The translations under genes were made by a program, and so were the position numbers. DNA of 50,511 nt from NCBI RefSeq assembly GCF_006345805.1, contig NW_021834203.1, forward strand, positions 1-50,511, read 5' to 3'. Positions within the stretch are counted from its first letter, which is position 1, and the number at the start of each line of letters is the position of its first letter. Under the pieces are notes generated by a model. It was given only the letters and a program-made list of their open reading frames with translations, did not search any database and had not been told where the DNA came from. Of the stretch, positions 6,828 through 47,014 are shown piece by piece. Source of the stretch: Octopus sinensis (Eukaryota).

Positions 6828-6857
6828 GGTTTCTTAGCAATAATTATTTTAAAAACT

Positions 6858-7574: not shown

Positions 7575-7664
7575 AGAAAAACATTTTATTTTAAATTCTC
7601 AAAAATATATTAAAAATAAAAACTGAACATGCATTCTCTCACGAATTTACTATGAAATAATAAT

Positions 7665-8230: not shown

Positions 8231-8441
8231 TGTAGAGAGATTACAAATGATTGAATTTGAACGAATTTATAAAAAAAATAAAACTTTTTCTTTCGTGCAT
8301 TTAAATAAATTAAATCTGTTCAGTTTTTTTTGTTTTTAAATTGTGATTTCATGAAAAACCGCATAAATATATGTTTCTTAAAAAAACTAAAAAATTTAAA
8401 ATACTTTAATCTAATATTAAGAAAAATAAAACAAAAAAAAT

Positions 8442-9900
8442 TTAAACATCTAAACTTTTACACTCAAAAATCTCCTTTGGACGATATTCATACCCACGAT
8501 AAAAGGGGTAAATAAAATAAACAAACAAATTACATTTCCCGCCAAAATACATCATTTTCCCGCCATTTCTTTTCCCCAGCACATTAAAACCAGTAAAAAA
8601 TTGCACAAATTCCAAAACAAAAGCCCAGACAGACAGCCAAAGAAAAGTCAGACACAAATTCCCAACAATGCAATCAACCAATGACTTTTCAAAACCACTC
8701 AACCATGAAATTGCCGGAAACATCAAAGACAATGCCGCTTTGATCCCATGGTTTCCAAATCCACGAGAAAATCGATAAAAAAATGAAGTGGCAGACATGA
8801 AAGTGAAAAGGATGAAGGAAAATAGAAAGAACATGAAGAACTGAGGTTTGTTTCCCAGTCCATTGCACTTCCCAATGACAAAACTGTGATATCCTTGAGA
8901 AATGATACATTTTTTGCACAAAAAACAATGTGTGGAGTCCACAGGGACTTGTTTGCTGCAAACATAACAATATTTAGTTTTGACCCATGTGGGAACATTA
9001 AGATTAGAGTTGTTAAATAGAGATATAGAGAGACCGTTGAGAAGACATTCCACAAAGAGAAATATCAGGACTAGTGAGAGGACAGTCCCATTCCCGATGG
9101 CAGGAAGGACAGTATAAAATTGATGAAATATGCATATGAGTGTACAAAAAATAAATAAAATTCCTATTTTTTTAATTAGACATGATTAAGACCAATATTA
9201 GGGGAGTCATGGGAGAAGCAGAGAAATGACATACAAGAACTTATAAATTAAATATTTATTATTTTATTAGATTTGATATAATATGAATATATTTAAAGAA
9301 AACGAATCATATTAAATTGCATGTTCTATACATAAAATTTATAAACTAAAATTTATTTTATTAAAATTTAAATTTTCTTTATCGTGATTTACAGTTTTCT
9401 TTTTGGATCATTTTTTGTTTATCCAACTGATATTTTTATTTAAAGTTCGATTTCTGTTATATTTAATAAATTCGCGTTGAAATTTTTTGTATCCAGTGTT
9501 TTCCAATAGTTAAAATCTTATTCTTTCTCAGAAGAAATATTCACATAAAAATTATCGCAGTTATCTTATAAATATATTTCATTTGGATTAATGAGTGTAA
9601 AGAAAATAAACAAGATTCCTATTATTTTAATTCAACATGATTGGGACTAATATTAGGAGAGTCATATGAGGAGCAAAAAATGGCATACAAAAACTTATAA
9701 ATTAAATATTCATTATTGGATCCAATTAGGAAGACACATAAAAGCAGGGATTTCAAACAATCGATTTCTGGACAGTAAATCCGCCTATAAGTAAAAATAA
9801 AATAACAAACAAGAATGACTTATATTTCTTGTGTTGGTTCCTATGATTGACAACATTGAGACAAAATATAAAATATAGTTTGACGATAATCTCCCCCATG
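8442..9900 (-). CDS. DHHC-type zinc-finger membrane protein (palmitoyltransferase fold) with the DHHC motif replaced by GYHS; 5' end unresolved
   Basis: YCYVCSKQVPVDSTHCFLCKKCIISQGYHSFVIGKCNGLGNKPQFF fits the Cx2C..HCxxCxxC..(DHHC)..CxGxxN..F pattern, with hydrophobic segments on both sides; the large exon extends to a splice acceptor near 9166. Confidence 0.75.
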
Positions 9901-11246
9901 GGATGAAAGTATGTCGAACTCTTAGAATAACAAAATTTTTAAATGACGAATAAATATATAATTAGAGAACAACTATTAAAAAAAAGAGCTTCCAGTGTGA
10001 CAGGACATTTTGAGATATTCAAATTAACAAGAAATGAATAATTTTTATGGATTACATCAAGCCTCCAGAAATATTCATTGTTGATAATGTAACGTAAAAA
10101 TGACTAAATTTATCTTTTTACATAGAAAATCACAATTCTGAATTTCGAATTTGAGAAGTTTGTAAAATTGGTGTTGTTTGAAGGTCTTTCAAATTCGATT
10201 AATAAAGAATCATTACTATTACTACCGTAATCAATAGAAAAGTCTTATTTTACTATTTAGCAAAATGTTTTTCTTAAGCAGTTTATTCTGTTTGAGATAA
10301 AACCATAGTCAAAATATGCAGCTTGCGATTACGTACTACAACACCGAAATTCAACTGCGAATTTTTTAGCGACGTTAATATACAGTGTGTATTATACACT
10401 ATTGTATCTAGATTTTTCCCATTCCAAAAAATCAGTTAAATCAATCTTATAAATCAGTGTATGTTATATAAAAGTCATTTCCTGTGTGATGACATGAGAT
10501 AAACTGATCAGTAAATAACACAAGGGGTATAGTTAGGTGTAGATAAGTCTCTACATGCTTATATCCAATCAACTGTTCTTAAAAGAACTTTGAAAATTAT
10601 CTTATTTAATAATTGCGGATCTAGTCCTTTCCTGACATTTAGTCAGCAAAAAACACCTTCTCGAAAGTCTACAGAATCAGAGAAGAAGAGCGAGAAAGAA
10701 AGGAGGTGTATGGAGTGGCGCCCTCTGCTTTCTCCAAGACTTTAACTTTGATAAATATACAGTTAGTATCGGAATATTATCTATCCTGTTTATATTATAG
10801 CTACATTATAGTGACGTATGCTCCACAAATGTTAGTTGATATCCCATGAATTTTTTTAATGTTAAAAGTTTCCTGTCCTTTCTTTTCGAGCATTTAGTAT
10901 TCTCCAACAAACCAGCCGTGCAAATGTTAGAAATTGCAGTAAATCTAGATCTAAATACAGGGGGATTTTCTTTCTGTGAGAAACGTAATTATATAATTTA
11001 GCCTAGATGGATCTGCAAAATTCCAGAAGACGAAGAAAATTTCATCTATATATTCATTCAATAAATAAAAATCTTACAAAATTGGGAAATATATTTAAAT
11101 TAGTTAAATCATTATTTTTAATACAAATCTCACTTTAAAAATTGATCGCAAAACAATTCTAGCATCTAATTTTGTTTTATTTAATTTATTATTAAATTAA
11201 AAAATGATTTTTTGTTTTCTAGTTGTTGTATGGCTGTATAATAAAC

Positions 11247-12106
11247 ATGACGGAGTACGTCAAAAACGTATTTTTTATTATTTTAAATAATTTGTAGAAA
11301 ATCTGGACTGTTAATAGATTAATTGAATTATTTGATTGTTCAGCTGATTGGGGTGAAAACATGTTTTTAGTTCATAACGGAAATATGGACAAAATATCTG
11401 AAGAATATTTAAAAAATAAACAAAAACTATCAAAAATCGACCTTTTATTCCACAGCTATTCTGGTTATGATTCAAATAATTAAAAATCAGAAAATAACTT
11501 TATAATTGGACCCACAGGAATAAAAAAATTATTGATCGATTTGAATTTCGATCACAAAAAAATTGAAGTTCTCATTTTAGCTTGGAAAATGGGAGCCAAA
11601 AAACAGTGCCAATTTACTTATTACGAATTTTTATCAGCCTTCCATGATTTAGGGTGTTTCAAACAAATATACGTAGTGTCCAAACATTGAGAGAATTGGC
11701 CACAGAATGTCTGAAATATGCTGAAATTGTCCAAAAAGACAAGAAAGAATTTTCTCGAATTTATTTCTTTGTTTTTGAGTATTCAAAAAATGTTGATTTT
11801 CTTGAATTTGACTTGGCCATTGCTTATTGGCGCCTTTTGTTTGATGAAAATGCGTTTTTATCCACTTGGATTGATTTTATTTCTGTTTTTTTATTTTTTA
11901 CATTTTTGGTAGGATGATGGGAAGAATATTACGAGGGATTGTTGGAATACTTTTTTGGTTTTTTATAGACAATTTCCTGATTTGGAAAGTCTTCGTTTTT
12001 ATGATTTTGGTGGTTGGATTTTACGTTTTTATTTTAAGCTGCTTGGCCACTTAAATTTGACCGGTTTGTCAGATACGCTCAAAATATTCTGGCTTTGGAT
12101 ATTTAA
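11247..12106 (+). CDS. DCUN1D: DCN1-like protein (defective in cullin neddylation; cullin-binding domain), 6 exons
   Basis: Introns 11268-11297, 11464-11490, 11654-11676, 11885-11912 and 12013-12038 give IIGPTGIKKLL..VLILAWKMGAKKQCQFT..EF, YFFVFEYSK..AIAYWRLL..W.DF..ITRDCWN..YDFGAAWPLKFDRFVRY*; specific paralog not determinable. Confidence 0.9.
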
Positions 12107-13694: not shown

Positions 13695-14130
13695 AAGCCA
13701 TTGCGGGAAAATGCTCAACAGCAATTATGCCAGAGAACAACACGAAGTAGTAAAATGTATTCATTTCCACCTCTGCAAGAAGTATGGAATTAGGGAAGTA
13801 AAAAAATTAAAAGGATACTAAGTCCAGTCAATCATACCCACACAAAAGGTTAAAATACGTGTTGATTCTTTAATAATTACAGACAGAAAAATTCAGTTCA
13901 GCGAATAAAATTAATTTTATCAAAATGGGAATCACTTCCCAGAATTGCCTAAAGCAGGACAAAATTGAGAAATATAACTACCACGTTCAAGTAAAAATAA
14001 TTCCACCTGGAACGAGGTCGTTTCCAATTTTTTTAAGAACCAAATTAAAAAGTTATTTATTGAAGATGGGACTCAGATCTACATACAGTCATCGTGTTGA
14101 AGAAACACTGAAGAGTATGATGGTCAAGCA
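13695..14130 (+). mobile_element. R4-like non-LTR 3' fragment (knuckle and C-terminal RLE region)
   Basis: HCGKMLNSNYAREQHEVVKCIHFHLCKKYG..VQSI..KIRVDS; EKYNYHVQVKIIP; YIQS.VLKKTLKSM. Confidence 0.7.
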
Positions 14131-16646: not shown

Positions 16647-17346
16647 ACGATGTCCTCGACTTACATGATGAGGTCCTTAAAACCTTCCCCCCCAAAAAAA
16701 TGTAAAAAAAATTTTCTGCATTTTGGTTAAAATGAACAACCACGATGTCCTCGACTTACATGATGAGGTCCTTAAAACCTTCCCGCCAAAAAATCAAAAA
16801 ATTATTTTCTGCATTTGATTAAAATGAACAACGTTAATGTCCTCGACATTCATGATGAGGTCCTTAAAACCTTCCCCCCCAAAAAAATTAAAAAAAAATT
16901 TTCTGCATTTTGGTTAAAATGAACAACTACGATGTCCTCGACTTACATGATGAGGTCCTTAAAACCTTCCCCCCCAAAAAAATTAAAAAAAATTTTCTGC
17001 ATTTTGGTTAAAATGAACAACTACGATGTCCTCGACTTACATGATGAGGTCCTTAAAACCTTCCCCCCCCAAAAAAATTAAAAAAAAATTTTCTGCATTT
17101 TGGTTAAAATGAACAACTACGATGTCCTCGACTTACATGATGAAGGTCCTTGAAACCTTCCCGCCAAAAAATCAAAAAATTATTTTCTGCATTTGATTAA
17201 AATGAACAACGTTAATGTCCTCGACTTACATGATGACGTCCTTAAAATCTTCCCCCCCAAAAAATCAAAAAATTATTTTCTGCATTTGATTAAAATGAAC
17301 AACGTTAATGTCCTCGACATTCATGATGAGGTCCATTAAAACCTTC
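16647..17346 (+). repeat. ~93-96-bp satellite array A (~7.5 units, two alternating subtypes)
   Basis: gtcctcgac recurs at 16652, 16747, 16839, 16934, 17028, 17124, 17217 and 17310. Confidence 0.95.
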
Positions 17347-18095: not shown

Positions 18096-18350
18096 TGCCT
18101 GCCGCATCTCTGCCTGCCGCATCTCTGCCTGCCGCATCTCTGCCTGCCGCATCTCTGCCTGCCGCATCTTCGCCTGCCGCATTTCCGCCTACCACATTTC
18201 TGCCTGCCGCATTTCCGCCTACCACATTTCCGCCTGCCGCATCTTCGCCTGCCGCATTTCCGCCTGCCGCATCTTCGCCTGCCGCATTTCCGCCTGCCGC
18301 ATTTCCGCCTGCCGCATTTCCGCCTACCGCATTTCCGCCTGCCGCATCTC
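18096..18350 (+). repeat. GC-rich 15-bp minisatellite (~17 units), followed by an A-rich low-complexity tract to ~18777
   Basis: (c/t)gcct(g/a)ccgcat(c/t)tc units; explains the six overlapping periodic ORFs at 18.0-18.45 kb. Confidence 0.95.
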
Positions 18351-18777
18351 CCCCCATCTCCCCCAAATAAAAAAAGAAAAAAAAGGAAATTACAAAGAAA
18401 CACGAAAAAATCAAATATAAAAGGTTAAAAAATAAAAAAAAGAAAATAAAGCACAAAAAAAAGAAAATAAAACAAAAAAAGAAAAAAAAATTTAAAAAAT
18501 AAAAAAAAATAAAAAAATAAAAAAAATTAAAAAATAAAAAAAAGAAAATAAAAACACAATAAAAATCAAAAAATAAAAAAAAAAACTAAAAAATAAAAAA
18601 AAGAAAATAAAACACAAAAAAAAGAAAATAAAACAAAAAAAACAAAAAAAAAAAAAAAGTTAAAAAATAAAAAAAAAGAAAATAAAACACAAAAAAAGAA
18701 AAAAAAATTCTAAAAAATAAAAAAAATAAAAAAAAGAAAATAAAAACACAATAAAAAACAAAAAATAAGAAAAAAAT

Positions 18778-18962: not shown

Positions 18963-19603
18963 GGTTACATTAAACCAGGTAGTTTTATACATCTACATAA
19001 ACTTATAGTCAATTCCTAGTTAGGGTCAAACTACTAAGTAAAGTCAACAAACTAATAAATTCTCCCAGCGAGACGGAGGGAACAGCTGTTGCCACGCATG
19101 ACAGCCAGCAGGATCCTCTGAATGAGGAAAGTAAATTCCCTAGGGTCCTTGGACCGCGAAGAACAAAGATGTCCCAATTTCTTTAGGGAAGTGAGGGTCC
19201 CGGAGCCAAAGAAGAGACCAACTTATAGTTGTTTGTTGCTCCTTCAGAAGATTCTTGTTTTGACATTTTTATAAATTATGAAGCATTTAGATTTTTTCTC
19301 ATTATTCTAAAATATCAATTATAAATTTTAAAATATTATTTTTATTTATGAAATCGGTTTTAAAGCTCATTCTTCTTTGGCATCGATTTTAATTTTTGTT
19401 ATCGAATATATTTAATCCCAAATACAAGCCTGGGTATTTGTCAATTTATAGATTTTTTGATTGATCGGATCTAGAAATTGAGTGGTCGCTCGCTGCGCTC
19501 GGTCGCGCGCTGCGCTCGCGACATAATAAGACATCCCATGATAAACTATACACCAAAATTTTTTGTGCAATCAAAAGGATTATTCTCAAATTTTCAGGAT
19601 AGA

Positions 19604-20753
19604 TTTTTTTGGTTGAGGTGGCGACGTACCTCTCTTGCACAATGTCTAAAACACACAGTACAACCGGACAGGCTATCAATTCTATCCTTTAACGTTCGTG
19701 GACTCTGCCAGACCTGGAAACAACAAGCACTCTGTAATGACATGGATAAATACCGTGCGGACATCGGCTGTCTACAAGAGACCAAACAAAAATCTGGAAT
19801 GGACCTAACCTATGGAAATTACCGAATGATCTTGCTACCTTCCGACTGCAGACACTATGGACAAGGTTTTGTGATTCACAAGAGGCTCGGTGTCAAACGC
19901 TGGTGGAGAATTACAGATAGGATTTCAGCAATCCAAGTACAAATCGGCGGTAAAGGCAGGCCTAATGCAGTCGCAACGGTCATTAACGTATACGCCCCGC
20001 ATAGTGGCAGAATCGTCAACGCTCCTGAAGAAATCGATGAATTCTATGAGGTACTGACCCGGACATACCTATCCTTGCAATCGTCTACCCTCCTGCTCGT
20101 CGTCGGCGACTGGAACGCCAAGACTGGCATCCGTCGAGGCACTGAAACTTTTATTGGACGGCACGGAAGAGGATATAGAAACCTCCCAGGAGCCCTATTG
20201 GCTAATTTCTGTAAAACACTCGGGCTATTCCTATGTAACACGGCCTTTGATCACTCTGCTCGGCACAAGTCTACCTGGACTGGCAGGAGACGTGGTGAAG
20301 ACGGGAACTATGTGCCGATCTACAACCAAATTGACTATATTGTGTGTCGCCAAAGAGACACATGGCTTCTACAAGACTCTCGTTCTTACGGGGGCTCGGT
20401 CGTTGACAGTGACCACAAGATAGTCATCGGCAGATTCAACCTGAAGAAATTATATGTGCTGGATAAAACAAATCGTCAATTCCCTCATAAATCGGACAGA
20501 TACTTGTCAGTTGTGCAAAAGGAGCTTAAGCTGAGGGCTGAGAACACCAAAGATATGGATAGCAAACTCGCACTGAAAGGCCGGCGTGCTGGCATCCAAA
20601 AACAAATAAAGACCCTAAACCTCCAATATGGCCGGGATATCCTGGCTTCCCGTCTTGGAGAACTGGAAACCCTCAAAGATAATGCACGCACGTTTATGGC
20701 TTTACGGTTTCCTTGTTTATGTTCCTGCGGGAAGTGCTAATAATAATAATAAT
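19604..20753 (+). mobile_element. RTE-like LINE deletion derivative: apurinic-endonuclease domain only, (TAA)6 tail, 15-bp TSD
   Basis: SFNVRGL, CLQET, NVYAP, VGDWNAKTG, HKSTW, QIDYI and DSDH all present; aattttcaggataga at 19589-19603 and 20754-20768; empty site seen at 15891-15953; no RT motifs. Confidence 0.9.
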
Positions 20754-20849
20754 AATTTTCAGGATAGAAACGTTTTTAATGGTCGACGGAAACAGTGTAA
20801 CCAATATTAATTTTTTGATTTCAGGCTCTACAAATTTAAGTAGGGAATT

Positions 20850-21189
20850 ATATCAGGAAAACTTGAAACCTTGGAAAAGAAAAATTATTTGGTAAAACTA
20901 AGAGTGATATTGATGCTATACTAAAGAAATTTGAGGATGTGATTTTCAAAACTTGGAGTTATCTTCCGGATTCTTTTTATGTATAAAAAAAATTTTATAT
21001 GGACTTTTGACAATATTTGTGTCTACTTATATGTGTGAACAAAGATTTTTGCACATGAATTATATCAAATCAAAATTAAGAAATAAAATTACCAGACTGA
21101 ATATACAATCAAACCTCTACTTAAAATTTTCTAATTACGACCTCTACTTAAAATCCTCCAAAGAAATAAGAAATCACATTTATCATTAA
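20850..21189 (+). mobile_element. hAT (SPIN/GTF2IRD2-like) C-terminal dimerisation remnant
   Basis: LLTIFVSTYMCEQRFLHMNYIKSKLRNK. Confidence 0.75.
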
Positions 21190-21299
21190 TGAGACGAATT
21201 TATTTTCTTGAAATAAATTCTAAATTATTATTGAATTTTCTGAAACGGAATTGTGTCAAAATTTTTAAAATACCATCTGGTGGCGCTCAGAGTGGAGGA

Positions 21300-22265
21300 C
21301 AGGTTGAGCGCGTATATCCAGACACTAGTGTTGCAGAAGACCTAAAAGAGCATGCAAGCCGAGACGAAGCACGAGTCATCGATGTATGCTGAGAAAGTTC
21401 AATTGAAAATAAATCCAAAAACCGGACATGATGAGAATAATTCTTGGAAAAGTAATCACGCGAATTGAAAGATTAGCAAATACAAAACTGAATGGAGTGA
21501 ACCTGTTCAAAGCAACAAAGCCGATTGAATATTTTCAAACTTTAAAATAAAATTTTGAAAATAAGAAAACGATCAAATCGTTATTCACAAAGCCAGTACA
21601 TGATGGTTATTTAACATTTATTTATATATAGTTGTGGGTGCGCAGATCGCTTCTTATAAAATTTCTGAAATTATTGCGAAAACTTCCAGTTCTCATATTA
21701 TTGCAAAAAATGTAATAATTCCATCACTGGAAGTAATAATATCGGATGTAAGATGATTCTAAAAGATGCTTTTAAAATTATTAAAACTCTACATCTTAGC
21801 AATGATTCGATTCGTCGAAGAATTGATGAAATGGGTGATATGTAAAAGAAATTCTTATTGCTTCAGCAAAGTAAGTTTTTTTTACAAATTGTCAATGGTT
21901 GGAAGATATAAGGAATTTGTTTCTCTTCTTAAAAAGATTCTCCATGTGTCATTCATCGTATTTTACATCGCCATCAACTGGTATCGAAGATTTTATGTCA
22001 TGATTTACATCAATCTTTAAACATTGTAATCAAAACAATTAACAAAATAAAAACACGAAGCAAATGTGATAGTTTTTTTAGAAAGTTTTGTAAGGATGCT
22101 GGTAAAGATTTTATTCGACTTTTATTACACATGGAAGTAAGATGGCATTCAAAAGGAAATGCTTTAGAAAGATTTGTTAATTTTTACGATGCAAATAGTC
22201 GCATTCTTGCAGACTGAAGAAAACTTGGTTTGGTTGAAGAGATCATTTCACGAAAAAATGATATA
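21300..22265 (+). mobile_element. Degenerate Buster/Charlie (ZBED5-like) hAT transposase, 5' part
   Basis: ATKPIEYFQTLK, ASYKISEIIAK..HIIAKNVIIP, LSNDSIRRRIDEM, HRHQLVSK and LLLHMEVRWHSKGNALERF. Confidence 0.85.
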
Positions 22266-23555
22266 TGTGACCGTCCATAGAATAAACACGCCGTTGAATG
22301 GACACTAGAGCATAAAAAGCATAATAAATAGCAAATTCTATAAATAATTGATTGAAAATGCATTTTTAATTAATTAAAATATTAATAGTTAATATTTTTA
22401 ATTATTTTTTAAGCGTGCAAAATGGGTTTTGTGAAACTGAAAGCTTCGGATCTAAAAATAATAAAAGAAATTCAAGACGGCCAGTCAATTGATGAGCCGG
22501 ATGGGAATGTCGACCGTAAGAAAAGATTTCGACACAAAAACTTGATCAAAAAAATGATATTCAATGAAGATAAAGTGTATATTTTACACAAGGGCCTTCG
22601 GTTACGTTTTTTTGTGAGGACGAAGTGGAACTAAGGGAAAAAACCTTAGAGGTATTCAAAAAAGTTTAAAAAATTTAGGCGGAGCATAACTACAATCATT
22701 TCGGACGAGATAGATTGTTTAGTAAATTGCGAACATCCTATTATTCCATATCTCGTCGAAAGATTGCTGATGCTATAAAAAAATGTGTTCATTGTCAGGT
22801 ATTTTTTATGTTTCAAATTCCTAGTCATTAAAGTTGATGGCCACTAAGCCTCCTATTACGCCAATAATTGTTAAAAGACCAAGAGATCGTTATATAGCTG
22901 ATTTACCAGATTTACGAAGATATAGTGACATCAATGATTCATTTTCTTGGGTATTTATAATTTTAAATACAAGCTCTTTTAGATTCTGGTCATCGTCGAC
23001 TCTTTTTCAAAGTATGCAATTGTGGAATTAGCCAAGACAAAATCGGCTAAAGAAATATCGGATTTATTTTAGAACGTGTTTTACTATGTCGGACCACCAC
23101 GGATTTTACATACTGATAATGGAAAGGAATTTACTAATTCCTATATGACTAAATTGTGTGAAAAGTACAATATTTATCATATCTCCGGAAGACCGCGAGC
23201 TCCCTGGATACAAGGGCAAGTTGAGAGGTTTAAAAACTGAAATTATTAAATAAAATTTAGGTTAAACCAAAGCGTAAAACGTTGGATAATTTCAACAAGC
23301 TCGTCATCTGGTCTATTTGGACGCTATGTAGAAATTATGAAAGATATAATTTTTGATTATAACAACACGATGCATGCCACTACGAAACAAATTCCTTTTT
23401 ACATTTTTATGGGCTGTGAATATCCAAATACAATATCAGATCTGGATCTTGAAGGGATGAAGGCATATGAGATCGATTCCGCGATATCTGATGCACGAGA
23501 ACATGCATACACGAATATAATTATTTCCGGAGAAAAAATGATAAATAAACGAATT
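22266..23555 (+). mobile_element. Ginger-like (retroviral-integrase-type DD35E) DNA transposon with four micro-introns; 3' end lost
   Basis: Begins TGT; spliced protein gives HNYNHFGRD..CVHC, RYIADL, ILVIVDSFSKY and ILHTDNGKEF..PWIQGQVERLNQSVKRW; introns 22652-22678, 22799-22824, 22951-22982 and 23228-23260; T-run frameshift at ~22610 and TAG at 23070. Confidence 0.85.
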
Positions 23556-23850
23556 TTTACAAATTTAATGAAATTACTATTCTTCTTAAAGGAAATTTTG
23601 TCAACATGATTGATTTCAAAAGAATAATGAAAACATTTGCAAAAAAATTATTGCTTTATCGACATAATTTTTCTATAAATCAGTTTAAAAACATTTCACA
23701 ACTATCTGAGATTAGTAAATATTTTAGTCAAAACAATATTATGACATATTGTCAACATTTGACGGAAATAAAAGCGGATATATCGGATTTCAATTTTGTC
23801 ATTCATAACACACAATGTGAAAGAAATAGACTGAAAATTAATTCTTAGCA
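23556..23850 (+). mobile_element. Continuation of the Buster-type hAT transposase after the Ginger-like insertion
   Basis: IFT.FNEITILLKGNFVNMIDFKRIMKTFAKKLLLYRHN follows on from ..IISRKNDI at 22265. Confidence 0.7.
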
Positions 23851-23874
23851 GAGCATAACTCAATGTGTTCCCAC

Positions 23875-24050
23875 TGCATGAAATGGAAGACCGTCGATCA
23901 CTGTGCCACTAGATGTGAGAAGATGGTACATGAGGATTATGTCAGGAGGCATGATGAAGTAGTGAGATGCATCCACTTTCATTTTTGTCGAGAATTTAGA
24001 CTCAAGAATAAGAAAAACTCAAAACACATTCGATAATTGAAAAATAGTAA
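23875..24050 (+). mobile_element. R4-like zinc-knuckle fragment
   Basis: HCMKWKTVDHCATRCEKMVHEDYVRRHDEVVRCIHFHFCREF. Confidence 0.8.
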
Positions 24051-24129
24051 TTCCTTCGGACTGTCTGGCAGAGGAAACCCATGCTTGTTTTCTACACTTG
24101 ATGTCTCACGGAGGCGTCAACAAAATTGA

Positions 24130-24856
24130 ATTTCTCTGTCGCCGGCATTAGTTTATCGTGAAAAGTGAGTTCATAAAAAAGTCATATTCTAGAGACTGGT
24201 TGAAAGCCATCCTTCTGTCCACCGCTGGCCTCCTCTTGGATGATGAATCGACTCGAATCGGGACCTGTCTTCGTCTGGGAATTCCCCTTTGCCACTCTCA
24301 GCGGTGCAAGTGCGGCCACATGATTGACCTCGATAGTCTCCACCCCCTTTCGTCCCGCTTAAGCACCGGGCGTATCCCGAGACACGCTGGCCTGAACCAC
24401 GTCGTTAAACAGGCCCTCAATGCCGCAGGCTTCCCTTCTGTTCTGGAGCCTGCCGGCCTCGACCGTGGCGACGGCAAGCGTCCAGACGGAATGACGGTCT
24501 TTCAATTCTCGGAAGGGAAATGTCTCGTTTGGGATGTTATCTGCGCGGACACCTTTGCCCCCGGGACCGTTGCTCAGTCTGCGTCCTCCCCCGGCTTCGC
24601 TTCCCGTCGGGCTGAGGAGACGAAGCGGAAGAAATTCGCCTCTCTCCCACCAAATTACCACTTTGTCCCGATTGCTGTGGAGACAAGTGGAGTGATAGGG
24701 ACGGCCGGAGTGTCGCTTCTGACCGAAATTGGGAAGTGCATCTACAAGTGCACGAAGGACCACCGCCAAATCGGCTGGCTGTACCAGAGAATATCAATCG
24801 CAATCTTGCGAGGTAACTCGCTTGCAATCCGAGGTGCAGCCACTGCTGACACTTAA
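24130..24856 (+). mobile_element. 5'-truncated CRE-like non-LTR retrotransposon (C-terminal knuckle and RLE)
   Basis: DWLKA..GLLLDD..LRLG..CKCG..GRIPRHAGLN..LEPAGLDRGDGKRPDG..LVWDV..FVPIAVET.G..LYQRISIAILRGN; GC-rich against the AT-rich background. Confidence 0.8.
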
Positions 24857-25418
24857 TTAGCTATTTTGAAGAACTCTTTTTCTAAAAATAAATAATTAAG
24901 ATAAAAAAGTCATATCAGAGTGCGATGTCTGCAAGTTTTCTCTTCCACATAAAGTTAAGTCTATTTTAGTAATGGATAGTCGAACGCTTTAATCAGACAA
25001 TTACGAGATCACTATCGAAGTTGAAGTGTCCTAGTGAAAATAAATGAGTCTCCATTCTTGAATATTCGGTGTATTGCTACAATACAACGATGCATTCATT
25101 TTCGTATGAGATCCCATTCAAGCGTTATCGAGGAATTCTAGGAACAAATCTGTTAACGATCATCGAATCTGTAGAAGGTGGCATATTTTAAATAGGCTGA
25201 AAAATCGTCAGCAAAAACATCTTTTAATTTCGAAATACATCCGATCGGTGGTGATGACTAAAAGAGGATGAATAGAAAAATGGGCGTGCATTGTAGTAAA
25301 TAAAATTATGCCATAGGGGACAAAGTTGTAAATTAATTTTTAATCTTATTAAGGTTCGGATTGCAAAGGGTTACGGAACGAATCCAGCTTTAATGTTGAA
25401 TAAATTCGAATCCAAGTA

Positions 25419-27816
25419 CAGTGCAACCCCTTATTGGGGCGACCCCGGACGTGGGGCACCCTCGGGTTTTGGGGCAATTTGAATTTCTATTAGGAGTTTT
25501 TCTGTTTATTCTTTATAAGATAAACCCTGTTATGGGGCATTTAATATTTTATATATTTGTTAGTTATAATTTTTGAATTTTATTTTGTAATAACTAGGGC
25601 CAACATTTTTTTAACCTTAAAAATTGAAAAATTTAACCTTAAAAAGTTAACTTTATTAACCTATAAACCAAAATTTTTAACCTTAAAATTAAAAAAATTT
25701 AACTTTATTTATTCTCAGGTTAAACCTGTAAAGTATAAATAAGAAACAATAAAATACTTTAAAGACTATTCATGACATAATTTTCCAAATTTTGTGTAGC
25801 AAAGTTTCTGTTTGACCTCATAAAACTCCTAAATTGCGAAAAGCATCGTTCGATAGATGCCGAGGATGGTTGACAGTTTTGAAGTAACGAATAATCTTCC
25901 GGAGAGATATTTTTATTATCCATATTAATAATTTTAGTCATATCGCTCTCTAAAAATCTCTTCTCTAAATATTTTTTGATCCCTGCTTCATCCTTCCCGA
26001 AGTCAAGTGTACTTAACGTCGAATATGCAAATTCTATTGTACATTCGTTACTTTCAAGTTGTAATATTTTCTCTATGAGATTAATTACTATATGAAAAAC
26101 CTAGAATATGTGAATAGTTATGCGAAATTGCACATAAGCTTTTGACTAGTTTTTCACTTTTCAATGCATTTTTGGTGGCAGTCACTAGTATTCCTTCGTC
26201 CTCAATCAAATCAAAAATGTTAATCACTGAGATTAAATTTCTTGAATAAAAAGATGCAGCCTTTAACCAGGTGCCCCATCTCGTCAACACAACTTTCGAG
26301 GAATTCCAATTTCGTAAAACAACAATTTTCGCTTGTGGTTCTTCTGACAGAAGCTTGCACGCTAGCTATCACATCATCAACTTCTGGATAAGATTTTCTG
26401 ACCTCCATTGAACAATTATGCAAAATATGGGTGACGCAATTAACATTAAAAAGATTAGAATATAAATTTTTTAAAATTTTCCCGGCTAAATCATTAATTA
26501 ATTAAAACAATACCGGATGTCATATACCGTGCAGCATCAAAAATGAGAAGCATAAAATTATCCCGTTCAACCATAAGGTTTCGAATGGCATCATCAACGA
26601 TCTGTGCTATGATATTTTTTGTTGGCGCGGATTCGATTGGCTTGAATGAGACCAAATAAGTAATTGTAGGGAGTTTTATTGATCCCATCAAAACGGCGAC
26701 ATAACGTTTGTTTCGAATTTGAGTTTCATCGGTTATTGTAAAAATTTTTTGTTCTCTAGAAAATAAACTTTGATGGAATACTTGAATTTGTCCCTAAAAG
26801 ATCCTATGTATTCATTTGCAATATATTTTGCACAATTCCTTGCTTGTGATTGCGAAGGAAGGGAAATTTTGTTTCTTTCGAAGATATCAACAAATAAAGG
26901 CATTGATAATTTATTTAGCGGAATGTCACATTTAGAAAAGCCTTAGTCACCCTCAAATTCCAGTTTCCAATTTCAGATTCATCTAATTTTTGTTGGCTAA
27001 ATGTAGTCAAACGATCTATATATTATCGAAAAATCTATACCAACGAAAGTCTTATGTTTCTTTGATATCCTGTGGAGGTTAACAAAATGCTTTTTCGAGC
27101 ACTTTACTGTCGTTAAGCATAGTTTAAACAATTCATCGTTGTTATTTAACTGAAATTCCTTTGGGAATTCGTTAACAATTAATTTTGCTTTAGTTAGATA
27201 AGACTTAGAAGTACGCGGCATACAACAAAAACTTGTAATTTACACGCTGTTTAATATTTATTTAATCGTATAATAATAATTTGTTGAAATAATTAAATAA
27301 AATAAAGTTAAAAAAATTTAACCTTACGATTTATTTTTTTAACTTTATAATTTTTTAAAATATAAAGATAGAACGTTTAAAAATAATATAAAAACAGTTT
27401 TTATTTAATTTTTATTTAAAATATTAAAATTTAACTTTATTAACTTTATCACCCCTAGTAATAACTAATAATAACGTGTTTCTGTTGTTTGATGGATGTA
27501 ATTTTGATGGATGTGAAGGTTCTGAGGGCTTCAGAGAACCCGATAATATTGATAAACATTCATTTCTCGACAAGGTCGTTTTGGATCGATTAATTTGACA
27601 ATGGATCGATTAATTTAAAAGTACCAATTTGGAGCGAAAATAACGGATCATTTCCCGACAAGTAAAGACTAAAATTGTTAGATGAAATTAAGAATAAACA
27701 TCTTTTGGTTTTAAATTAACAAAACGTTAGTTTTTTTCGTTAATATTAGAAAACCCCTCTATCTGGGGAAACCCCTGTTTTTGGGGCACCTAGTGCCCCA
27801 AAAAGAGGTTAGACTG
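25419..27816 (-). mobile_element. TIR DNA transposon with a degenerate CGGBP1-type hAT-like transposase
   Basis: TIRs cagtgcaaccccttattggggc / cagtctaacctctttttggggc (18/22), each flanked by TA; frames give ELF.KLCLTTVKCSKKHFVNLHRISKKH, LLIFDAARYM, TRWGTWLKAA and SSASIERCFSQF. Confidence 0.8.
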
Positions 27817-29108
27817 TATTCCGATACTTGTAAAATACGTACAATTTTGTCAATTCATGCGTAGAGGTCGAATTTTCAAATGGTGAGAAAAAATCGGTGT
27901 TGATGTGGCGTTTAAAACAATGGACAGGTTGCCCATCGGGCCCATGTCACATATTAAAAAGAAAATATAAAAATTTCAAACAGAAATCGACTTGAAAGGA
28001 ATAAACCAAACAAACTTTTCGTGGAGGGCAAACACGAAACTTAATATCTATATTTAAAACCAATATAGGTTCAGGATCAAACTGTTAAAAAAGCATCGGA
28101 AACAAATTTTAAAGATTTGTTTTATAATTGTTCACAAGCAAAAAGATATCCGCATTTGATTTCTCATTTTTCATCTTGTTTGATCTGATAAGAGTGTGTA
28201 ATGTACTTTGGGAGTATATTCACCATAAACATATACACCATCGGCTACACAATATTACAAACTAGACTTTTATAATAACTCAGATGTGGGGAATAAATGG
28301 CGGGTACAAACATTATAATAGACTGTTCTTTGATTTGTCCAGAATGTATAATTATTATGATTATCAAGTCATATTGAAAGTCATATTAAAGTATAAAAGG
28401 GCAAATATTAAAAAATTTTAATAGAAATTGACTTGAAAGGAATAAATCGAAATAAAATATAAAAAAGATGAAATTTAAAACTGTATAATCACAAAATTAA
28501 AGTTCATAAGAATTATTCCTTCATAATCAATAGAAATAGACCAATATAGAAAAACATAAAAACGACAACAAACTAAATCAACTACGTGTATCAGCGTGCT
28601 CTAAATTATTACCATTAGGCTTGCCATTAAAAATATTCTAATTAAAAAATTTTTAATAAATATAAATTTTATTTATATCAATAAGACATCTCATGATGAA
28701 CTATACACCAACAAATTAGGGTTACGAACAAATTAGCAAGATTCATTAACTTTTCTAGTCATCCTAGTCTCTATCATCTAACTATTCTGACGTCCCTCAA
28801 CTTGTAGTAGCTTATATCTCGTGTTATTTGCTGTGTTCAGAAGATGATATGATAATTGATATAATTATTTTTAATCATGTTTTATAGCCCCCAACTGATT
28901 TTTGATGAAATCAATGCTCGAGAAGATAGTTTGGAAAACACTGCAAATAGACCAGAGAGGTATCTTTAACAATGGAAGATGGTGGAATATACTGAAGTTG
29001 TTATTCTAGGAATCAGGAGGAAAATGTGCTACAATAAGATCAAATGTCGGCAGCCCAAACATTAACAAGTTATGTGATGATTCGAACAGACCACTGGTTG
29101 ATGTAGAC

Positions 29109-32394: not shown

Positions 32395-32545
32395 TTTGGT
32401 GGGTGATCCCAACAAGCGTGATTTTGTTCCTCATTTTGGCGAGTACAAAGATGCCCGGCTTGTTATTCTTGACCATCAGATCTGTACATATTATTGTGTC
32501 AACACGAATCTCCACAGTTATTCTCAATAACTGACTAAACAGAAT
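32395..32545 (-). mobile_element. R4-like RLE fragment
   Basis: SVIENNC.EIRVDTIICTDLMVKNNKPGIFVL..LVGIT. Confidence 0.65.
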
Positions 32546-32559
32546 AAATGACTATATAA

Positions 32560-33030
32560 TCTTCATCATATTTCCATCTTCTTCTTTCTATCATTTTATC
32601 TCAAGCGATAAGAAGTTTTGAATACGCTTTTCAGTGCTCCCGATAATAATTGTTCCATTTTCGACTCCGTTATTGAATTCGGATTTTGAGCACCTATAAA
32701 CAAGTAGAAAGGTATTTTTCCGGTTTTGGAATGTATTGTTTATTGTAAGCATAAACAATGTCTTTAATTATGGTACAATATCGCCCAAAATATCCACAAG
32801 AGGCACTTGCTGATGATATCCAACATTTTATGCTTTGGTTAGACTTTAAAAAATAAAAACCATCAGCCAACCTCTCTACTTGATTGAATATTTTTAACAG
32901 ACTTGGTCAATTAACGAATTACAGAATTCTTTTGTCTGTTTGGAGAATGATTGGCGGTCCGATGTAATAAAAAACATTTTGGAATAGGTTGGCTATTTTG
33001 CAAGCTGCTTTAGCCTAAATCGTGTAGTGT
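32560..33030 (-). mobile_element. Second, more decayed fragment of the Ginger-like integrase family
   Basis: FQNVFYYIGPPIILQTD..KEFCNS, QVER[intron-like ~28 nt]NQSIKCWISS..GYFGRY..IKDIVYAYN..KIPFYLFIG parallels 23070-23430. Confidence 0.75.
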
Positions 33031-33196
33031 GTTTTCTTTGTTTTCTCTGATTTTTTTGATTTTTTGAAGAATTTCTTTGGTGAGATTCACATTACGCATA
33101 GTTCTACGCATTTTGTATAAATTAAAAAGTAGAATATTTCTTTAAAATATTTAATTAATTGTTAATATTGATGTATAAAATAACTATTTATATATA

Positions 33197-34031
33197 GGGT
33201 TTTCCACACTTTTTTGAGACTTTTCACGCAATTTCGTGTAAAGTAGATTATCGGCTTTTCGTTTCAAGCAATTCTGCCACTTTTTCAAGCAATTTCGTGC
33301 ATAAGAAGATTATCAGTTTATTGTTTCAAGCAAATTCGCTACTTTTTCAAGCGATTCCGTCACTTTTTCAAGTAATTTCGCCATTTTTCAAGCAATTTCG
33401 CCAAATTCTTAATATTTATTTTTTAAAAATATACTCGTTTTACTAATATAGATTTTAGTTTATAGCTCTATGAATGAATTATTATTTATTCAAAAAGGAA
33501 AGCCGAAAAAGAGAGCAAAATTAATAAGACAAAAAATCATTAAGTTTAATCAATTTCAATTTCTAATGGATCAGTGAAACTGTTTTAAACATCGATGAAT
33601 AGTGCTTTTGCTGATGACTAAATTTTGTTCTGAAAAAAATTTATTTCGTAAATCACGTAATGTTATCGTAGGGTGACAATCGACCCATTCTCTAATTTGA
33701 TTTTTTTGATTTTCATTCAGCTTTGATGATCTATTTCCACCTGTTGGTTTTTTAAATATTCTTCCCTCATTATGAAATGTGTTAACTATTGAAACTATTG
33801 TACTCCTTGGAAGTTTAAGTATTTTTGAGATTTCCGTATTGCTTAGTCCTGAATTTGAGTGAGTTATTATCAATCTTCTAGTATCATTGTTAATTTTGTT
33901 TCTACTCATGACAAAAAATGTAGTGTTTAATAGGTTTATAAATGTATTTAATTGACATAAAAAAATAAATTTATTTTTAAAATAAATATAAAAAAATTTG
34001 GCGAAATTGCTTGCAAAAGTGTGGAAAACCC
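33197..34031 (-). mobile_element. IS630/Tc1-mariner deletion derivative retaining an open N-terminal HTH ORF (33571-33909)
   Basis: TIR gggttttccacactttt at both ends flanked by TA(TA); subterminal caagcaatttc repeats; ISKILKLPRSTIV..GGNRSSKL..HPTITLRDL..ISKSTIHRCLK; no DDE region. Confidence 0.85.
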
Positions 34032-35411
34032 TATATTTTTTAAATACTTTTAAGCCAGGTGTCCATTTATCCGCGTGTCTATTTATCCGACTATGACATT
34101 TTCAACCACTGACTGAACAGAATGAATGACTTTTTTTAATTAAATAAGCTATTAAATTTATATTGGTGTCATTTTTTGACAAAATCTCGGTTTTGGAACA
34201 CATTCAAATTAAAAAAAATTTCACATGATTTACATATTTTACCAAAAAATATTCAAAATTTTTAATTGACAAACTTTATTCAAAGATAATTATTCAGGGT
34301 TTCTCAAAAAAGATTTTAGTCCATAATTACAAAATTTAATTGTCAATAAATAATTTTATAAGTTTTAAACTGATATTTTTATATATTTCTATATTAAAAA
34401 ATGACTTAATCAAAAACTATGTTAAGAATTTGTTTTAAATAATGTACTCATTGCAATGTAAATTGAGTTTCTACAGTCCGTGGAGAGTCATGTTTGTAAT
34501 CTTGTCACTTGTCTGTGTTTCTAATGTTTCCATTTAACTACCTAGAAAGTTGAAAAATTGGCAATGCTTTTTACAAAAGAAAGTCTTATTTTTAAACGAT
34601 GAGACTACAATTAAACCTGTAAATTTGATTATATAATTTAATTAGAACATTTGATACAAAGATCACTTTGAACTTTGATGACGTTTATGCTCCAACCGAT
34701 TTTGTAAGAACTTAATAAATTAATTAAAAAAACAAATTTTAAATATGAATCTCCCAGAATTGAACAAGGATTATTAAAATATACGTAATTGGATAATCTA
34801 ATACGTTTTATAGAGTATAATAGTCAAATATCTAAACTTAAACCGAAAATGAACTCATAATTAAACTCGAAATAATTATTTCACCGAGTTTTAGAAAACG
34901 AGAGGCTGAAATATTTACATACCGTAGAACTCAGAAAAGACAGGTAAGATAAATTTTAAATAAAAATTTGATGAAAGGGAAAGTATGATTTGACAAGTTA
35001 AAAAAATGTAAGAATTTCATAACTAGTAACTTTAATAAAAATAATTTAATTATAGTCACAATCACGCTGACTTTAAGCAACAAACAAAGATTGTTTAACT
35101 TCAGAAAATAATGGCATAAATTTTGACTGAAAGTAATGATTAGTCAAAATTATGAACCGACTAAATATGTCGATATTCCATTTCTATTTAATTTTGTATT
35201 TAATTTATTTTTATTTTTAAAAACATTTGGAGTCAAAATGAAAAATTTAAAACCGCAAGAAACGTTTGTATAAACTTTAATTTTCTTTATAGATGTCAAG
35301 AAAACAAATTTTGGCCGAATGTTTAGGCGAGCTTTTATTAATTGTACTCCTTTTATGGAGACAAAGTTTACTGACTTTCTTTACTAAAATTATGCAAATT
35401 TTAAACGTACA

Positions 35412-39420: not shown

Positions 39421-39649
39421 AATAATCGCGTCGAGGGGGTACTTTAAATACACTCAACCCTCTCAAATTGACCAACAAAATTGAAGCAACCAAAAATGGC
39501 CAATTAGAGAATAAAGTCGATAATTTTAAAAAAAACTACTTTAATGTGTCTTCAGTTAGCATATTTTTTTAAATTAAAGAAAATTAAAACATTTTTCATC
39601 AACAAATTTTGGATCAAGTTTTTTTTAATGATTGCATCATTATAACAGT

Positions 39650-46176: not shown

Positions 46177-46206
46177 GGTTTCTTAGCAATAATTATTTTA
46201 AAAACT

Positions 46207-46923: not shown

Positions 46924-47014
46924 AGAAAAACATTTTATTTTAAATTCTCAAAAATATATTAAAAATAAAAACTGAACATGCATTCTCTCACGAATTTACT
47001 ATGAAATAATAATA

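What the first reader, a model, noticed from the sequence alone, without database searches (positions are those of the whole stretch)
22266..23555. Transposase gene with four host-style micro-introns (Ginger-like DD35E integrase)
Four GT-AG segments of 27, 26, 32 and 33 nt each restore the integrase consensus when removed (LE|AEHNYNH, CQ|SLKL, SW|ILVIVD, VER|LNQ). Exactly 35 residues separate the D of TDNG from the catalytic E, and the element starts TGT. Ginger elements are known to carry introns, but these match the tiny size of the host introns. That implies the element co-evolved with, or was shaped by, the host's miniaturised splicing, which argues for long vertical residence or a domesticated ancestor. 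This copy is disabled by one frameshift and one TAG.
Basis: partly seen in the sequence, partly recalled or inferred. Interest (0 to 1): 0.75.

Follow-up and report, generated by a model that had tools for sequence, protein, structure and literature searches.

The report
Dead Ginger2-like transposon with micro-introns
This is a dead copy of a cut-and-paste transposon whose integrase-type gene is split by four tiny (26-33 base) introns like those of its host's own genes. The host is almost certainly a dicyemid kidney parasite whose DNA was deposited as an Octopus sinensis contig.

Summary
Four GT...AG segments (22652-22678, 22799-22824, 22951-22982, 23228-23260; 27, 26, 32 and 33 nt) each restore one reading frame when removed. 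The product is an H2C2 zinc-finger plus DD35E integrase that aligns without gaps to ten homologues across all four junctions.

A host DCN1-like gene in the same window has five introns of 23-30 nt, so "host-style" is right.

The window is GenBank contig VCDQ01012456.1, labelled Octopus sinensis. Its genes have micro-introns, and its LIPT2 gene is at most 48% identical to any animal's. It is most likely DNA of a dicyemid, the renal parasite of that octopus.

The element starts at 22266 with TGTGACCGTCCA. This matches 11 of 12 bases of the inverted repeat of an intact relative. A complete relative has about 60-bp TIRs and a 5-bp duplication. This is a Ginger2/TDD-type DNA transposon, not an LTR element.

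A second, diverged relic (34098-32540, minus strand) shares the terminus and an intron at the site of intron 4. Relatives elsewhere have no introns at these sites.

Copy 1 is more damaged than stated: it has a frameshift in a T7 run, a TAG, a lost C-terminal domain and no 3' repeat.

It is a new member of a known kind, of moderate interest.

The parts
22266..22306 (+). 5' terminus of the element (TGTGACCGTCCATAG...CGCCGTTGAATGGAC). It fits the TGTNR pattern and is homologous to the inverted repeats of intact relatives.
   Evidence: Both TIR arms of L001 have their best window match exactly at 22266-22303 (score 32, against a maximum of 31 and a mean of 23 in 40 shuffles). 11 of 12 bases match the L001 3' TIR and 10 of 11 match the L007 terminus. 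29 of 45 bases match the copy-2 terminus without gaps, against 23-26 in shuffles. The upstream hAT-like reading frame stops here.
22307..22421 (+). A+T-rich leader and presumed promoter between the terminus and the ATG.
   Evidence: There is no open frame. The spacing is similar in copy 2 and in L007 (173 nt).
22422..22651 (+). Exon 1 (N-terminal region). A 1-nt frameshift lies in the T7 run at 22607-22613.
   Evidence: Frame 0 reads MGFVKLK...LRLRFF and then continues in another frame as FFCEDEVELREKTLE. The N-terminus aligns with full-length relatives.
22652..22678 (+). Intron 1: 27 nt, phase 0, GTATTC...TTTAG. It carries in-frame TAA and TAG if retained.
22679..22798 (+). Exon 2: H2C2 zinc finger (H80, H84, C113, C116).
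   Evidence: Pfam Integrase_H2C2 9.7e-8. These are invariant columns in alignment A1.
22799..22824 (+). Intron 2: 26 nt, phase 0, GTATTT...CCTAG.
   Evidence: NCBI's gene model P0026 uses the same acceptor.
22825..22950 (+). Exon 3 (SLKLMATKPP...NDSFSW).
   Evidence: The identical exon is used in the Gnomon model P0026.
22951..22982 (+). Intron 3: 32 nt, phase 0, GTATTT...TTTAG.
   Evidence: Its donor is also used by P0026.
22983..23227 (+). Exon 4: catalytic core with D165 (22998-23000), D204 (23115-23117) and E240 (23223-23225). A premature TAG lies at 23070-23072.
   Evidence: Pfam rve 1.7e-14. Coordinates and spacing. Copy 2 has CAA (Gln) where copy 1 has TAG.
23228..23260 (+). Intron 4: 33 nt, phase 2, GTTTAA...TTTAG. 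It carries in-frame TGA and TAA if retained.
   Evidence: Copy 2 has a 28-nt GT..AG insert at the same site.
23261..23609 (+). Exon 5, ending at TGA 23607-23609. The last ~25 residues no longer match relatives, and the C-terminal ~70-residue domain of relatives is missing.
   Evidence: Alignment A1. A profile HMM finds no C-terminal match in any frame.
23610..23840 (+). Degenerate 3' remainder, followed by an unrelated retroelement fragment. No 3' inverted repeat was found.
32540..34098 (-). Copy 2 of the same family: terminus TGTCATAGTCGG at 34098, ATG near 33111, an internal deletion of residues ~30-175, frameshifts and stops. A 28-nt GT..AG insert sits at the intron-4 site (about 32870-32843). 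A Tc1/mariner-like element is nested at 33190-34037.
24900..25340 (+). Third, more distant integrase relic, internally deleted. VERFNQT is contiguous, so there is no intron at the intron-4 site.
11247..12106 (+). Comparator: the host DCN1-like gene, with five micro-introns at 11268-11297 (30 nt), 11464-11490 (27), 11654-11676 (23), 11885-11912 (28) and 12013-12038 (26).
   Evidence: The spliced protein hits Pfam Cullin_binding at 1e-20. It aligns over residues 50-237 with human DCN1-like 2 (4gao, 3.5e-28) across four of the junctions. Coordinates.

Best explanation
Window 22266 to about 23840 is a 3'-truncated, inactivated copy of a Ginger2/TDD-type cut-and-paste DNA transposon. It lives in the genome of a dicyemid mesozoan, and the contig was deposited as Octopus sinensis. 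The element's single gene encodes a retroviral-integrase-like transposase of roughly 420 aa, with an H2C2 zinc finger and a DD35E core.

In an intact copy (inferred, not shown), the pre-mRNA would need the host spliceosome to remove four 26-33-nt GT-AG introns. Any retained intron gives a premature stop. The protein would then bind the TGTGA... terminal inverted repeats, cut at the CA-3' ends and insert the element with a short (4-5 bp) duplication at an A+T-rich target.

Shown here: the gene structure, the domains and catalytic residues, the 5' terminus, the match to host intron size, the second copy sharing intron 4, and the lack of these introns in relatives outside this genome. Inferred: actual splicing, mobility, and that the introns arose or were miniaturised during long residence in the dicyemid lineage.
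For: Gene and domains. Alignment across all four junctions is gap-free against ten homologues. GT-AG at four out of four junctions has p about 2e-9.

Host-style introns: the DCN1-like gene has introns of 23-30 nt, validated by Pfam and by PDB entry 4gao. The published dicyemid median is 27 nt, and such introns are otherwise known in animals only in myxobolids.

Host identity: the contig is VCDQ01012456.1 of the O. sinensis assembly. Dicyema japonicum was itself collected from O. sinensis and has 36.7% GC and 49% repeats. The contig's LIPT2 is only 40-48% identical to its best animal hits, and no cephalopod appears among the 120 listed.

Transposon, not pol: the terminus lies 156 nt before the ATG. 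It is homologous to the TIRs of L001 (43-nt arms, TGTCACCGTCC) and to the L007 terminus. The related element in L006 is complete, with ~60-bp TIRs and the 5-bp TSD TGGCT. The family consists of stand-alone 400-480 aa proteins on ~2-2.5 kb contigs, and no protein near the top of the ranking is long enough to be an RT-bearing pol polyprotein. The named relatives are KRBA2-like, and KRBA2/SCAND3 derive from Ginger2 (PMC3575427).

Second copy: shared terminus and shared intron-4 site. Relatives L001, L004/L005, L006 and L007 lack the introns.
Against: No RNA evidence of splicing could be obtained. No 3' TIR or TSD exists for either copy in the window, so mobility of this family in this genome is unproven. 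No tree was built with reference Ginger1/Ginger2/TDD sequences. The dicyemid assignment is circumstantial, because no dicyemid genome could be searched. Most relatives come from ORF-based gene calls, which favour intronless copies, so 'relatives lack introns' is partly an ascertainment effect. L006 and L007 were checked at the DNA level, however. Whether contigs L006 and L007 are octopus or parasite DNA is undetermined.
Confidence: 0.8

Rival explanations
1. It is a decayed host gene domesticated from an integrase (like GIN1, KRBA2 or ZBED9). It acquired host introns as an ordinary gene and is not a mobile element.
For: It has four host-type introns, which are more usual in host genes than in transposons. 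No 3' TIR or TSD was found in the window.
Against: The window holds two copies that share termini and an intron site, plus a third, more distant relic, all within 12 kb and all dead. A conserved TGTGACCGTCC terminus lies 156 nt upstream of the ATG and is homologous to the TIRs of complete elements elsewhere. Copy 2 carries a nested Tc1-like insertion. The copies sit among LINE, hAT and Tc1 debris.
Confidence: 0.06
2. The contig is genuine octopus DNA, and the element, with its parasite-type introns, reached the octopus by horizontal transfer from a dicyemid.
For: The contig is deposited as O. sinensis and annotated with an O. sinensis gene model. Related elements with the same TGTCACCG termini lie on large contigs of the same assembly.
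Against: Ordinary cellular genes on the same contig carry 23-30-nt introns (DCN1-like) or are far from any cephalopod sequence (LIPT2 at most 48% identical). The whole 50 kb therefore looks like parasite DNA. Introns under about 30 nt are reported in animals only for dicyemids and myxobolids.
Confidence: 0.05
3. The four segments are not introns but chance insertions accumulated in a pseudogene.
For: The copy is a pseudogene with other lesions: a frameshift, a TAG and a lost C-terminus.
Against: All four segments are bounded by GT..AG (p about 2e-9). All fall in the 23-33-nt range of host introns. All are more A+T-rich than the exons. Each restores frame and homology exactly. One site is shared with an independently decayed copy. 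The other lesions have no GT-AG borders.
Confidence: 0.03
4. It is the integrase end of an LTR retrotransposon or a Maverick/Polinton element.
For: The best PDB matches are retroviral and Ty3 integrases. One relative is named 'Pro-Pol polyprotein, partial'.
Against: There is no RT/RNase H upstream. An ATG, a conserved N-terminus and the element terminus lie directly upstream. Relatives are stand-alone genes between short TIRs. An H2C2 finger is present, which Maverick integrases lack (PMC2836005).
Confidence: 0.03

Closest known systems
Ginger2/TDD DNA transposons (Bao, Kapitonov & Jurka 2010, PMC2836005)
   Same: A single integrase-like transposase with an H2C2 finger and DDE core and without OTU/Ulp1 domains. 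Relatives are 2-3 kb elements with short TIRs. Termini fit TGTNR (TGTGA here). An A+T-rich sequence (GATATA) abuts the 5' end. A complete relative has a 5-bp TSD, as TDD-4/5 do.
   Different: The gene is split by four 26-33-nt introns, and the relatives examined have none at these sites. It is found in a dicyemid, a phylum for which the held literature describes no transposon family. This copy lacks its 3' end.
Ginger1 elements with introns (for example Ginger1-5_HM, four introns) and their domesticated descendants GIN1/GIN2
   Same: An integrase-type transposase gene interrupted by up to four canonical GT-AG introns.
   Different: Ginger1 proteins carry YPYY and GPY/F motifs and a C-terminal OTU or Ulp1 domain, and they make CCGG/CCGT duplications. 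None of these is seen here. Ginger1 introns are not described as miniaturised.
KRBA2 and SCAND3/ZBED9 (mammalian genes with a Ginger2-derived integrase domain; PMC3575427)
   Same: The named database relatives of this protein are 'KRAB-A domain-containing protein 2(-like)', so the integrase clade is the same.
   Different: Those are single-copy host genes fused to KRAB/SCAN/hAT domains. This one is multi-copy, dead, bears termini and has no fusion partner.
Dicyemid spliceosomal micro-introns (Ogino 2010; Lu 2019; Zverkov 2019)
   Same: Length 26-33 nt against a genomic median of 27 nt. GT-AG borders, A+T-rich, and a stop codon if retained.
   Different: They sit in a mobile element rather than a cellular gene.

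Membership tests
Ginger2/TDD DNA transposons | Stand-alone integrase-like transposase (H2C2 zinc finger + DDE core), with no RT/RNase H/protease in the element | tested here: met
   Pfam rve and Integrase_H2C2. The ATG lies 156 nt after the element terminus. Relatives are 400-480 aa single proteins.
Ginger2/TDD DNA transposons | Terminal inverted repeats of about 45-300 bp beginning TGTNR | tested here: inconclusive
   The 5' end is TGTGA... and is homologous to the TIRs of L001 and to the 5' termini of L007 and copy 2. No 3' arm was found for either copy in the window. Complete TIRs are seen only in relatives (L001 43 nt, L006 about 60 nt).
Ginger2/TDD DNA transposons | 4-bp (metazoan) or 5-bp (TDD) target-site duplication, with an A+T-rich RTATAY target | not testable with these tools
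   The 3' end is missing here. The 5' flank is GATATA. The L006 relative has the 5-bp TSD TGGCT. The L007 flank is TATATAT.
Ginger2/TDD DNA transposons | Absence of the YPYY and GPY/F motifs | tested here: inconclusive
   The C-terminal consensus of ten relatives (IGDxV..D.D.N..TR..PL) shows no GPY/F. This copy's own C-terminus is lost.
Ginger2/TDD DNA transposons | Phylogenetic grouping with TDD-4/5, Ginger2 and KRBA2/SCAND3 integrases | not tested
   Support is indirect only. The named nearest relatives are KRBA2-like.
Ginger1 DNA transposons | C-terminal OTU or Ulp1 domain, GPY/F and YPYY motifs, CCGG/CCGT TSD | tested here: not met
   Only rve and H2C2 domains are present. Relatives end after a short C-terminal domain at 400-480 aa.
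LTR retrotransposon (Ty3/Gypsy) integrase | Integrase is the C-terminal part of a pol with RT/RNase H, and the element is bounded by LTRs | tested here: not met
   Upstream is a hAT fragment, then the terminus and a leader. There are no direct repeats flanking it. Relatives lie between inverted, not direct, repeats.
Maverick/Polinton integrase | Integrase lacking the N-terminal H2C2 finger, inside a 15-20 kb element with a protein-primed polymerase | tested here: not met
   The H2C2 finger is present. Relatives' elements are ~2.2 kb.
Spliceosomal GT-AG micro-introns of dicyemid type | GT...AG borders, length about 20-35 nt, and exact restoration of frame and homology on removal | tested here: met
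.
Spliceosomal GT-AG micro-introns of dicyemid type | Removal from the transcript (junction reads or cDNA) | not testable with these tools
   No dicyemid RNA data are reachable. NCBI's model P0026 uses the i2 acceptor and the i3 donor, but this may be ab initio prediction.

The most novel reading that the evidence does not exclude
The family gained all four introns after it entered the dicyemid lineage. The evidence is that every relative examined elsewhere is intronless at these sites, and two diverged copies here share at least intron 4. That would make it a rare traceable case of spliceosomal intron gain inside a mobile gene, in one of only two animal lineages known to have introns this short. 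The micro-introns would then act as a host lock: only a spliceosome that handles introns of 33 nt or less could produce the transposase, so the element would be silent if transferred to the octopus host.
Probability: 0.3. Interest if true: 0.6.

Novelty: new member of a known kind. Interest (0 to 1): 0.4.

Why it matters
First, it shows that a transposon long resident in a genome with extreme intron miniaturisation carries the same 26-33-nt introns as cellular genes. Its relatives in other genomes have none at these sites. The family could therefore be used to ask when and how introns are gained or shrunk in dicyemids, if intact copies and RNA data confirm it.

Second, no transposon family of Dicyemida is described in the searched literature, although half of the Dicyema japonicum genome is repeats.

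Third, and practically, a 50-kb contig of the public Octopus sinensis assembly is very probably parasite DNA. It carries a chimeric gene model ('craniofacial development protein 2-like') stitched from three unrelated transposon fragments. Such contamination can mislead comparative and horizontal-transfer studies of cephalopods.

Tried and rejected
- **3' inverted repeat of copy 1.** A repeat search, a pattern search with 2 mismatches, local alignment and an ungapped scan found nothing. The one candidate, 26920-26930 GGAATGTCACA, is at chance level (10 matches found, 7 expected) and has no extended similarity.
- **Blind scan for ORF-bridging micro-introns.** It was flat across lengths and uninformative. 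It was replaced by homology-guided reconstruction of the DCN1-like gene.
- **Exact-sequence look-up of host ORFs.** They are not in the collection.
- **C-terminal domain.** A profile HMM of ten relatives against all frames downstream of 23550 found none. A by-eye similarity in another frame (KKLLLYRH against RRFPLYDH) is not statistically supported.
- **Continuation of the interrupted hAT frame downstream, to locate the empty site.** Not found.
- **Ciliate host with TAA/TAG = Gln.** This would make the TAG a sense codon. It was rejected because the 238-aa LIPT2 ORF and the 420-aa endonuclease ORF are open in the standard code, i4 contains TGA, and the transposon set (LINE, hAT, Tc1) is typical of animal genomes.
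- **Microsporidian or myxozoan host.** These are considered less likely, on general knowledge rather than a test made here: microsporidian genes rarely carry introns, while the DCN1-like gene here has five, and the contig comes from an octopus sample.
- **Ciliate-type TA-bounded eliminated sequences.** Rejected, because excision at TA does not restore the frame.
- **The 'circular contigs' of Dicyema (PMC6543705) as an explanation of the contig's overlapping ends.** Those are under 2 kb, so they are unrelated.
Full report
**1. The observation**

The sequence at 22266-23620 was read and translated in three frames. Four segments, each bounded by GT and AG, lie at 22652-22678 (27 nt), 22799-22824 (26 nt), 22951-22982 (32 nt) and 23228-23260 (33 nt). 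Removing them joins the pieces into one frame that runs from about 22607 to a TGA at 23607-23609, with a single internal TAG at 23070-23072.

- The spliced 356-aa product hits Pfam rve (1.7e-14) and Integrase_H2C2 (9.7e-8).
- In the PDB it hits the prototype foamy virus integrase (3.7e-15) and the Ty3 integrase region.
- The zinc ligands H80, H84, C113 and C116 and the catalytic D165, D204 and E240 are all present.
- There are 38 residues between the two aspartates and exactly 35 between D204 and E240.

Aligned with ten homologues, the spliced protein shows no gap at any of the four junctions (LE|AEH, CQ|SLKL, SW|ILV, VER|LNQ). The segments are therefore insertions relative to every relative. 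They are 77-88% A+T against 65% for the exons. Read through from the upstream exon, each one gives a premature stop: VFKKV*, VFFMFQIPSH*, a frameshift, and FKN*. From dinucleotide frequencies in the window, a fixed-length segment starts GT and ends AG with p about 0.002. Allowing three placements per junction, four out of four gives about 2e-9.

**2. Whose genome is this?**

One database hit (P0026, 'craniofacial development protein 2-like [Octopus sinensis]') sits on a contig of exactly 50,511 bp. The look-up shows that the window is VCDQ01012456.1 of assembly GCA_006345805.1.

The contig does not behave like octopus DNA.

- A DCN1-like gene at 11247-12106 is split by introns of 30, 27, 23, 28 and 26 nt, all GT-AG.
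- Its spliced product hits Pfam Cullin_binding (1e-20). It aligns over residues 50-237 with human DCN1-like protein 2 (4gao, 3.5e-28) across four of those junctions.
- An intronless LIPT2 ORF (6861-7574, minus strand) is only 40-48% identical to its best hits, which are molluscs, echinoderms and arthropods. No cephalopod appears among the 120 listed.

Introns shorter than about 30 nt are reported in animals only for dicyemids and myxobolid myxozoans (PMC13644364). The dicyemid median is 27 nt (PMC6543705). Dicyema japonicum was itself collected from the renal sacs of Octopus sinensis, and its genome has 36.7% GC and 49% repeats (PMC6736024).

The window is therefore most likely dicyemid DNA carried into the octopus assembly. 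This is an inference, because no dicyemid assembly could be searched. A ciliate host with a variant genetic code was considered and rejected: long ORFs are open in the standard code, intron 4 contains TGA, and the transposon set is typical of animal genomes.

**3. A transposon, and which kind**

Upstream of the ATG (22422) there is no RT or RNase H. There is an A+T-rich leader and, at 22266, the point where a hAT-like reading frame stops.

The closest full-length relative, P0001 (44% identity, 413 aa), lies on a 2.3-kb contig (L001) between 43-nt inverted repeats that begin TGTCACCGTCC. Both arms of that repeat have their best match in the whole window exactly at 22266-22303. The score is 32, against a mean of 23 and a maximum of 31 in 40 shuffles. 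The first 12 bases, TGTGACCGTCCA, match 11 of 12.

The same terminus recurs in three other elements.

- **L007.** It lies 173 nt upstream of the KRBA2-like gene P0010 on another contig of the assembly (TGTCACCGTCT, flanked by TATATAT).
- **L006.** A related element here is complete, with ~60-bp inverted repeats starting TGTCACCGGTTG and a 5-bp target duplication TGGCT.
- **Copy 2 in the window.** Its terminus is described in section 4.

A profile search shows the family to be stand-alone proteins of 400-480 aa on ~2-2.5 kb contigs, from microsporidia, marine metagenomes and sequencing-run assemblies. No protein near the top of the ranking is long enough to be an RT-bearing pol polyprotein.

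The features that define Ginger2/TDD elements are an H2C2 + DDE transposase without OTU/Ulp1, TGTNR termini, short TIRs, 4-5-bp duplications and A+T-rich targets (PMC2836005). KRBA2/SCAND3 derive from that clade (PMC3575427). The element is thus Ginger2/TDD-like. It is not Ginger1, an LTR retrotransposon or a Maverick. What could not be shown is a 3' repeat or a duplication for this copy, or a tree with reference sequences.

**4. Other copies in the window**

tblastn finds two more integrase relics.

Copy 2 runs on the minus strand from 34098 to about 32540.

- Its terminus, TGTCATAGTCGG..., matches copy 1 at 29 of 45 ungapped positions, and each is the other's best hit. Shuffles reach 23-26.
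- It has an ATG near 33111, an N-terminus like copy 1, a deletion of residues ~30-175, frameshifts and stops.
- A Tc1/mariner-like element is nested in its leader, with inverted repeats at 34037-34016 and 33211-33190 and an HTH ORF at 33909-33574.
- It has CAA (Gln) where copy 1 has TAG, so the TAG is a C-to-T nonsense change.
- It carries a 28-nt GT...AG insert exactly between the codons for QVER and NQS. This is the site of intron 4, although the insert sequence is unrelated.

The best-aligned 172 nt of exon 5 are about 70% identical between the two copies. The intron site therefore predates a considerable divergence.

The third relic (24900-25340, plus strand) is more distant. It reads VERFNQT without interruption.

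Relatives outside this contig are uninterrupted at all four sites at the DNA level: L001, the Tara Oceans contigs L004/L005, L006 and L007. This fits acquisition or retention of the introns specifically in this host lineage. One caveat is that ORF-based gene calls favour intronless relatives.

**5. State of copy 1**

- The frameshift lies in a run of seven T (22607-22613). It could be a real indel or a long-read homopolymer error.
- The TAG at 23070-23072 is probably real, since copy 2 has Gln there.
- The last ~25 residues before the TGA no longer match relatives. The conserved C-terminal domain (IGDxV...D.D.N..TR..PL, about 70 residues) is not detectable in any frame.
- An unrelated retroelement fragment follows from about 23840.

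The copy is therefore more damaged than 'one frameshift and one TAG', and its right end is missing.

**6. Mechanism**

Shown: the gene structure, domains, catalytic triad and left terminus.

Inferred from the family: transcription from the A+T-rich leader, and removal of four micro-introns by the host spliceosome. Phases are 0, 0, 0 and 2, and any retention truncates the protein. The transposase would then bind the TGTGA... inverted repeats, cleave at the CA-3' ends and integrate with a 4-5-bp duplication.

The two introns whose length is a multiple of three (27 and 33 nt) both contain in-frame stops. So do the two such introns of the host DCN1-like gene. NCBI's automatic model P0026 uses the acceptor of intron 2 and the donor of intron 3. 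This shows they score as splice sites but is not RNA evidence.

**7. Comparison and novelty**

Introns in integrase-type transposase genes are known: Ginger1 has up to four. Dicyemid micro-introns are known too. New here is a Ginger2-type family with four dicyemid-sized introns. The held literature describes no transposon family for this phylum. This is a new member of a known kind.

The most novel reading not excluded is de novo gain of all four introns in a mobile gene, with the micro-introns acting as a host-specific expression lock. I give that probability about 0.3.

**8. What did not work**

- No 3' repeat was found.
- The blind micro-intron scan was uninformative.
- The exact look-ups of host ORFs failed.
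- No continuation of the interrupted hAT frame was found.
- The published small circular contigs of Dicyema do not explain this contig's overlapping ends.

Noticed in passing
whole window (= GenBank VCDQ01012456.1, assembly GCA_006345805.1): The contig is deposited as Octopus sinensis. It carries cellular genes with 23-30-nt introns and a LIPT2 at most 48% identical to any animal. It is very probably dicyemid (renal parasite) DNA contaminating the octopus assembly.
   Followed up: partly
19742-28966 (+): NCBI gene model P0026 ('craniofacial development protein 2-like') is a chimera. It joins a LINE endonuclease ORF (19742-20719), a hAT fragment (21939-22136), exon 3 of the integrase (22825-22950) and a short piece at 28889-28966.
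   Followed up: yes
1-11219 and 39351-50511: The two ends of the contig are the same sequence at 99.1-99.8% identity, with one 61-bp indel at 8195-8255. The unit is about 39,350 bp. This could be a tandem duplication, a circular molecule or an allelic overlap artefact of assembly.
   Followed up: partly
33190-34037 (-): A Tc1/mariner-like element is nested in the leader of integrase copy 2. It has inverted repeats ATATAGGGTTTTCCACACTTTT, internal direct repeats (gaaattgcttgaaaaagtggc) and an intact 112-aa HTH ORF (33909-33574), but no DDE part.
   Followed up: partly
19478-20740 (+): An intact 420-aa endonuclease/exonuclease/phosphatase ORF of a LINE, more G+C-rich than its surroundings. RT fragments of LINEs lie at 656-1228 and 40001-40429 (-). 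Related C-terminal fragments lie at about 13700-13818 and 23850-24020.
   Followed up: no
8445-9185 (-) and its duplicate 47736-48344: A DHHC-family ORF (Pfam DHHC 6.7e-12) in which the catalytic DHHC motif reads GYHS. It may be a pseudo-enzyme or a decaying gene.
   Followed up: no
16647-17346; 18097-18351; 18426-18777: A satellite of 93/187-nt units (7.4 copies), a 15-nt repeat GCCTGCCGCATTTCC (17 copies) and a long A-rich tract, lying between the host genes and the transposon cluster.
   Followed up: no
11268-11297, 11464-11490, 22652-22678, 23228-23260: Every intron whose length is a multiple of three, in both the host gene and the transposon, contains an in-frame stop codon. This is the pattern expected if retained introns must be detectable by nonsense surveillance.
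   Followed up: partly
L006 5146-7365; L007 2828; L001 63-2334: Related Ginger2-like elements on two large contigs of the same assembly and in an unidentified sequencing run share the TGTCACCG terminus and a CGCCGTTG subterminal motif with the window's copy. Whether L006 and L007 are octopus or parasite DNA was not determined.
   Followed up: partly
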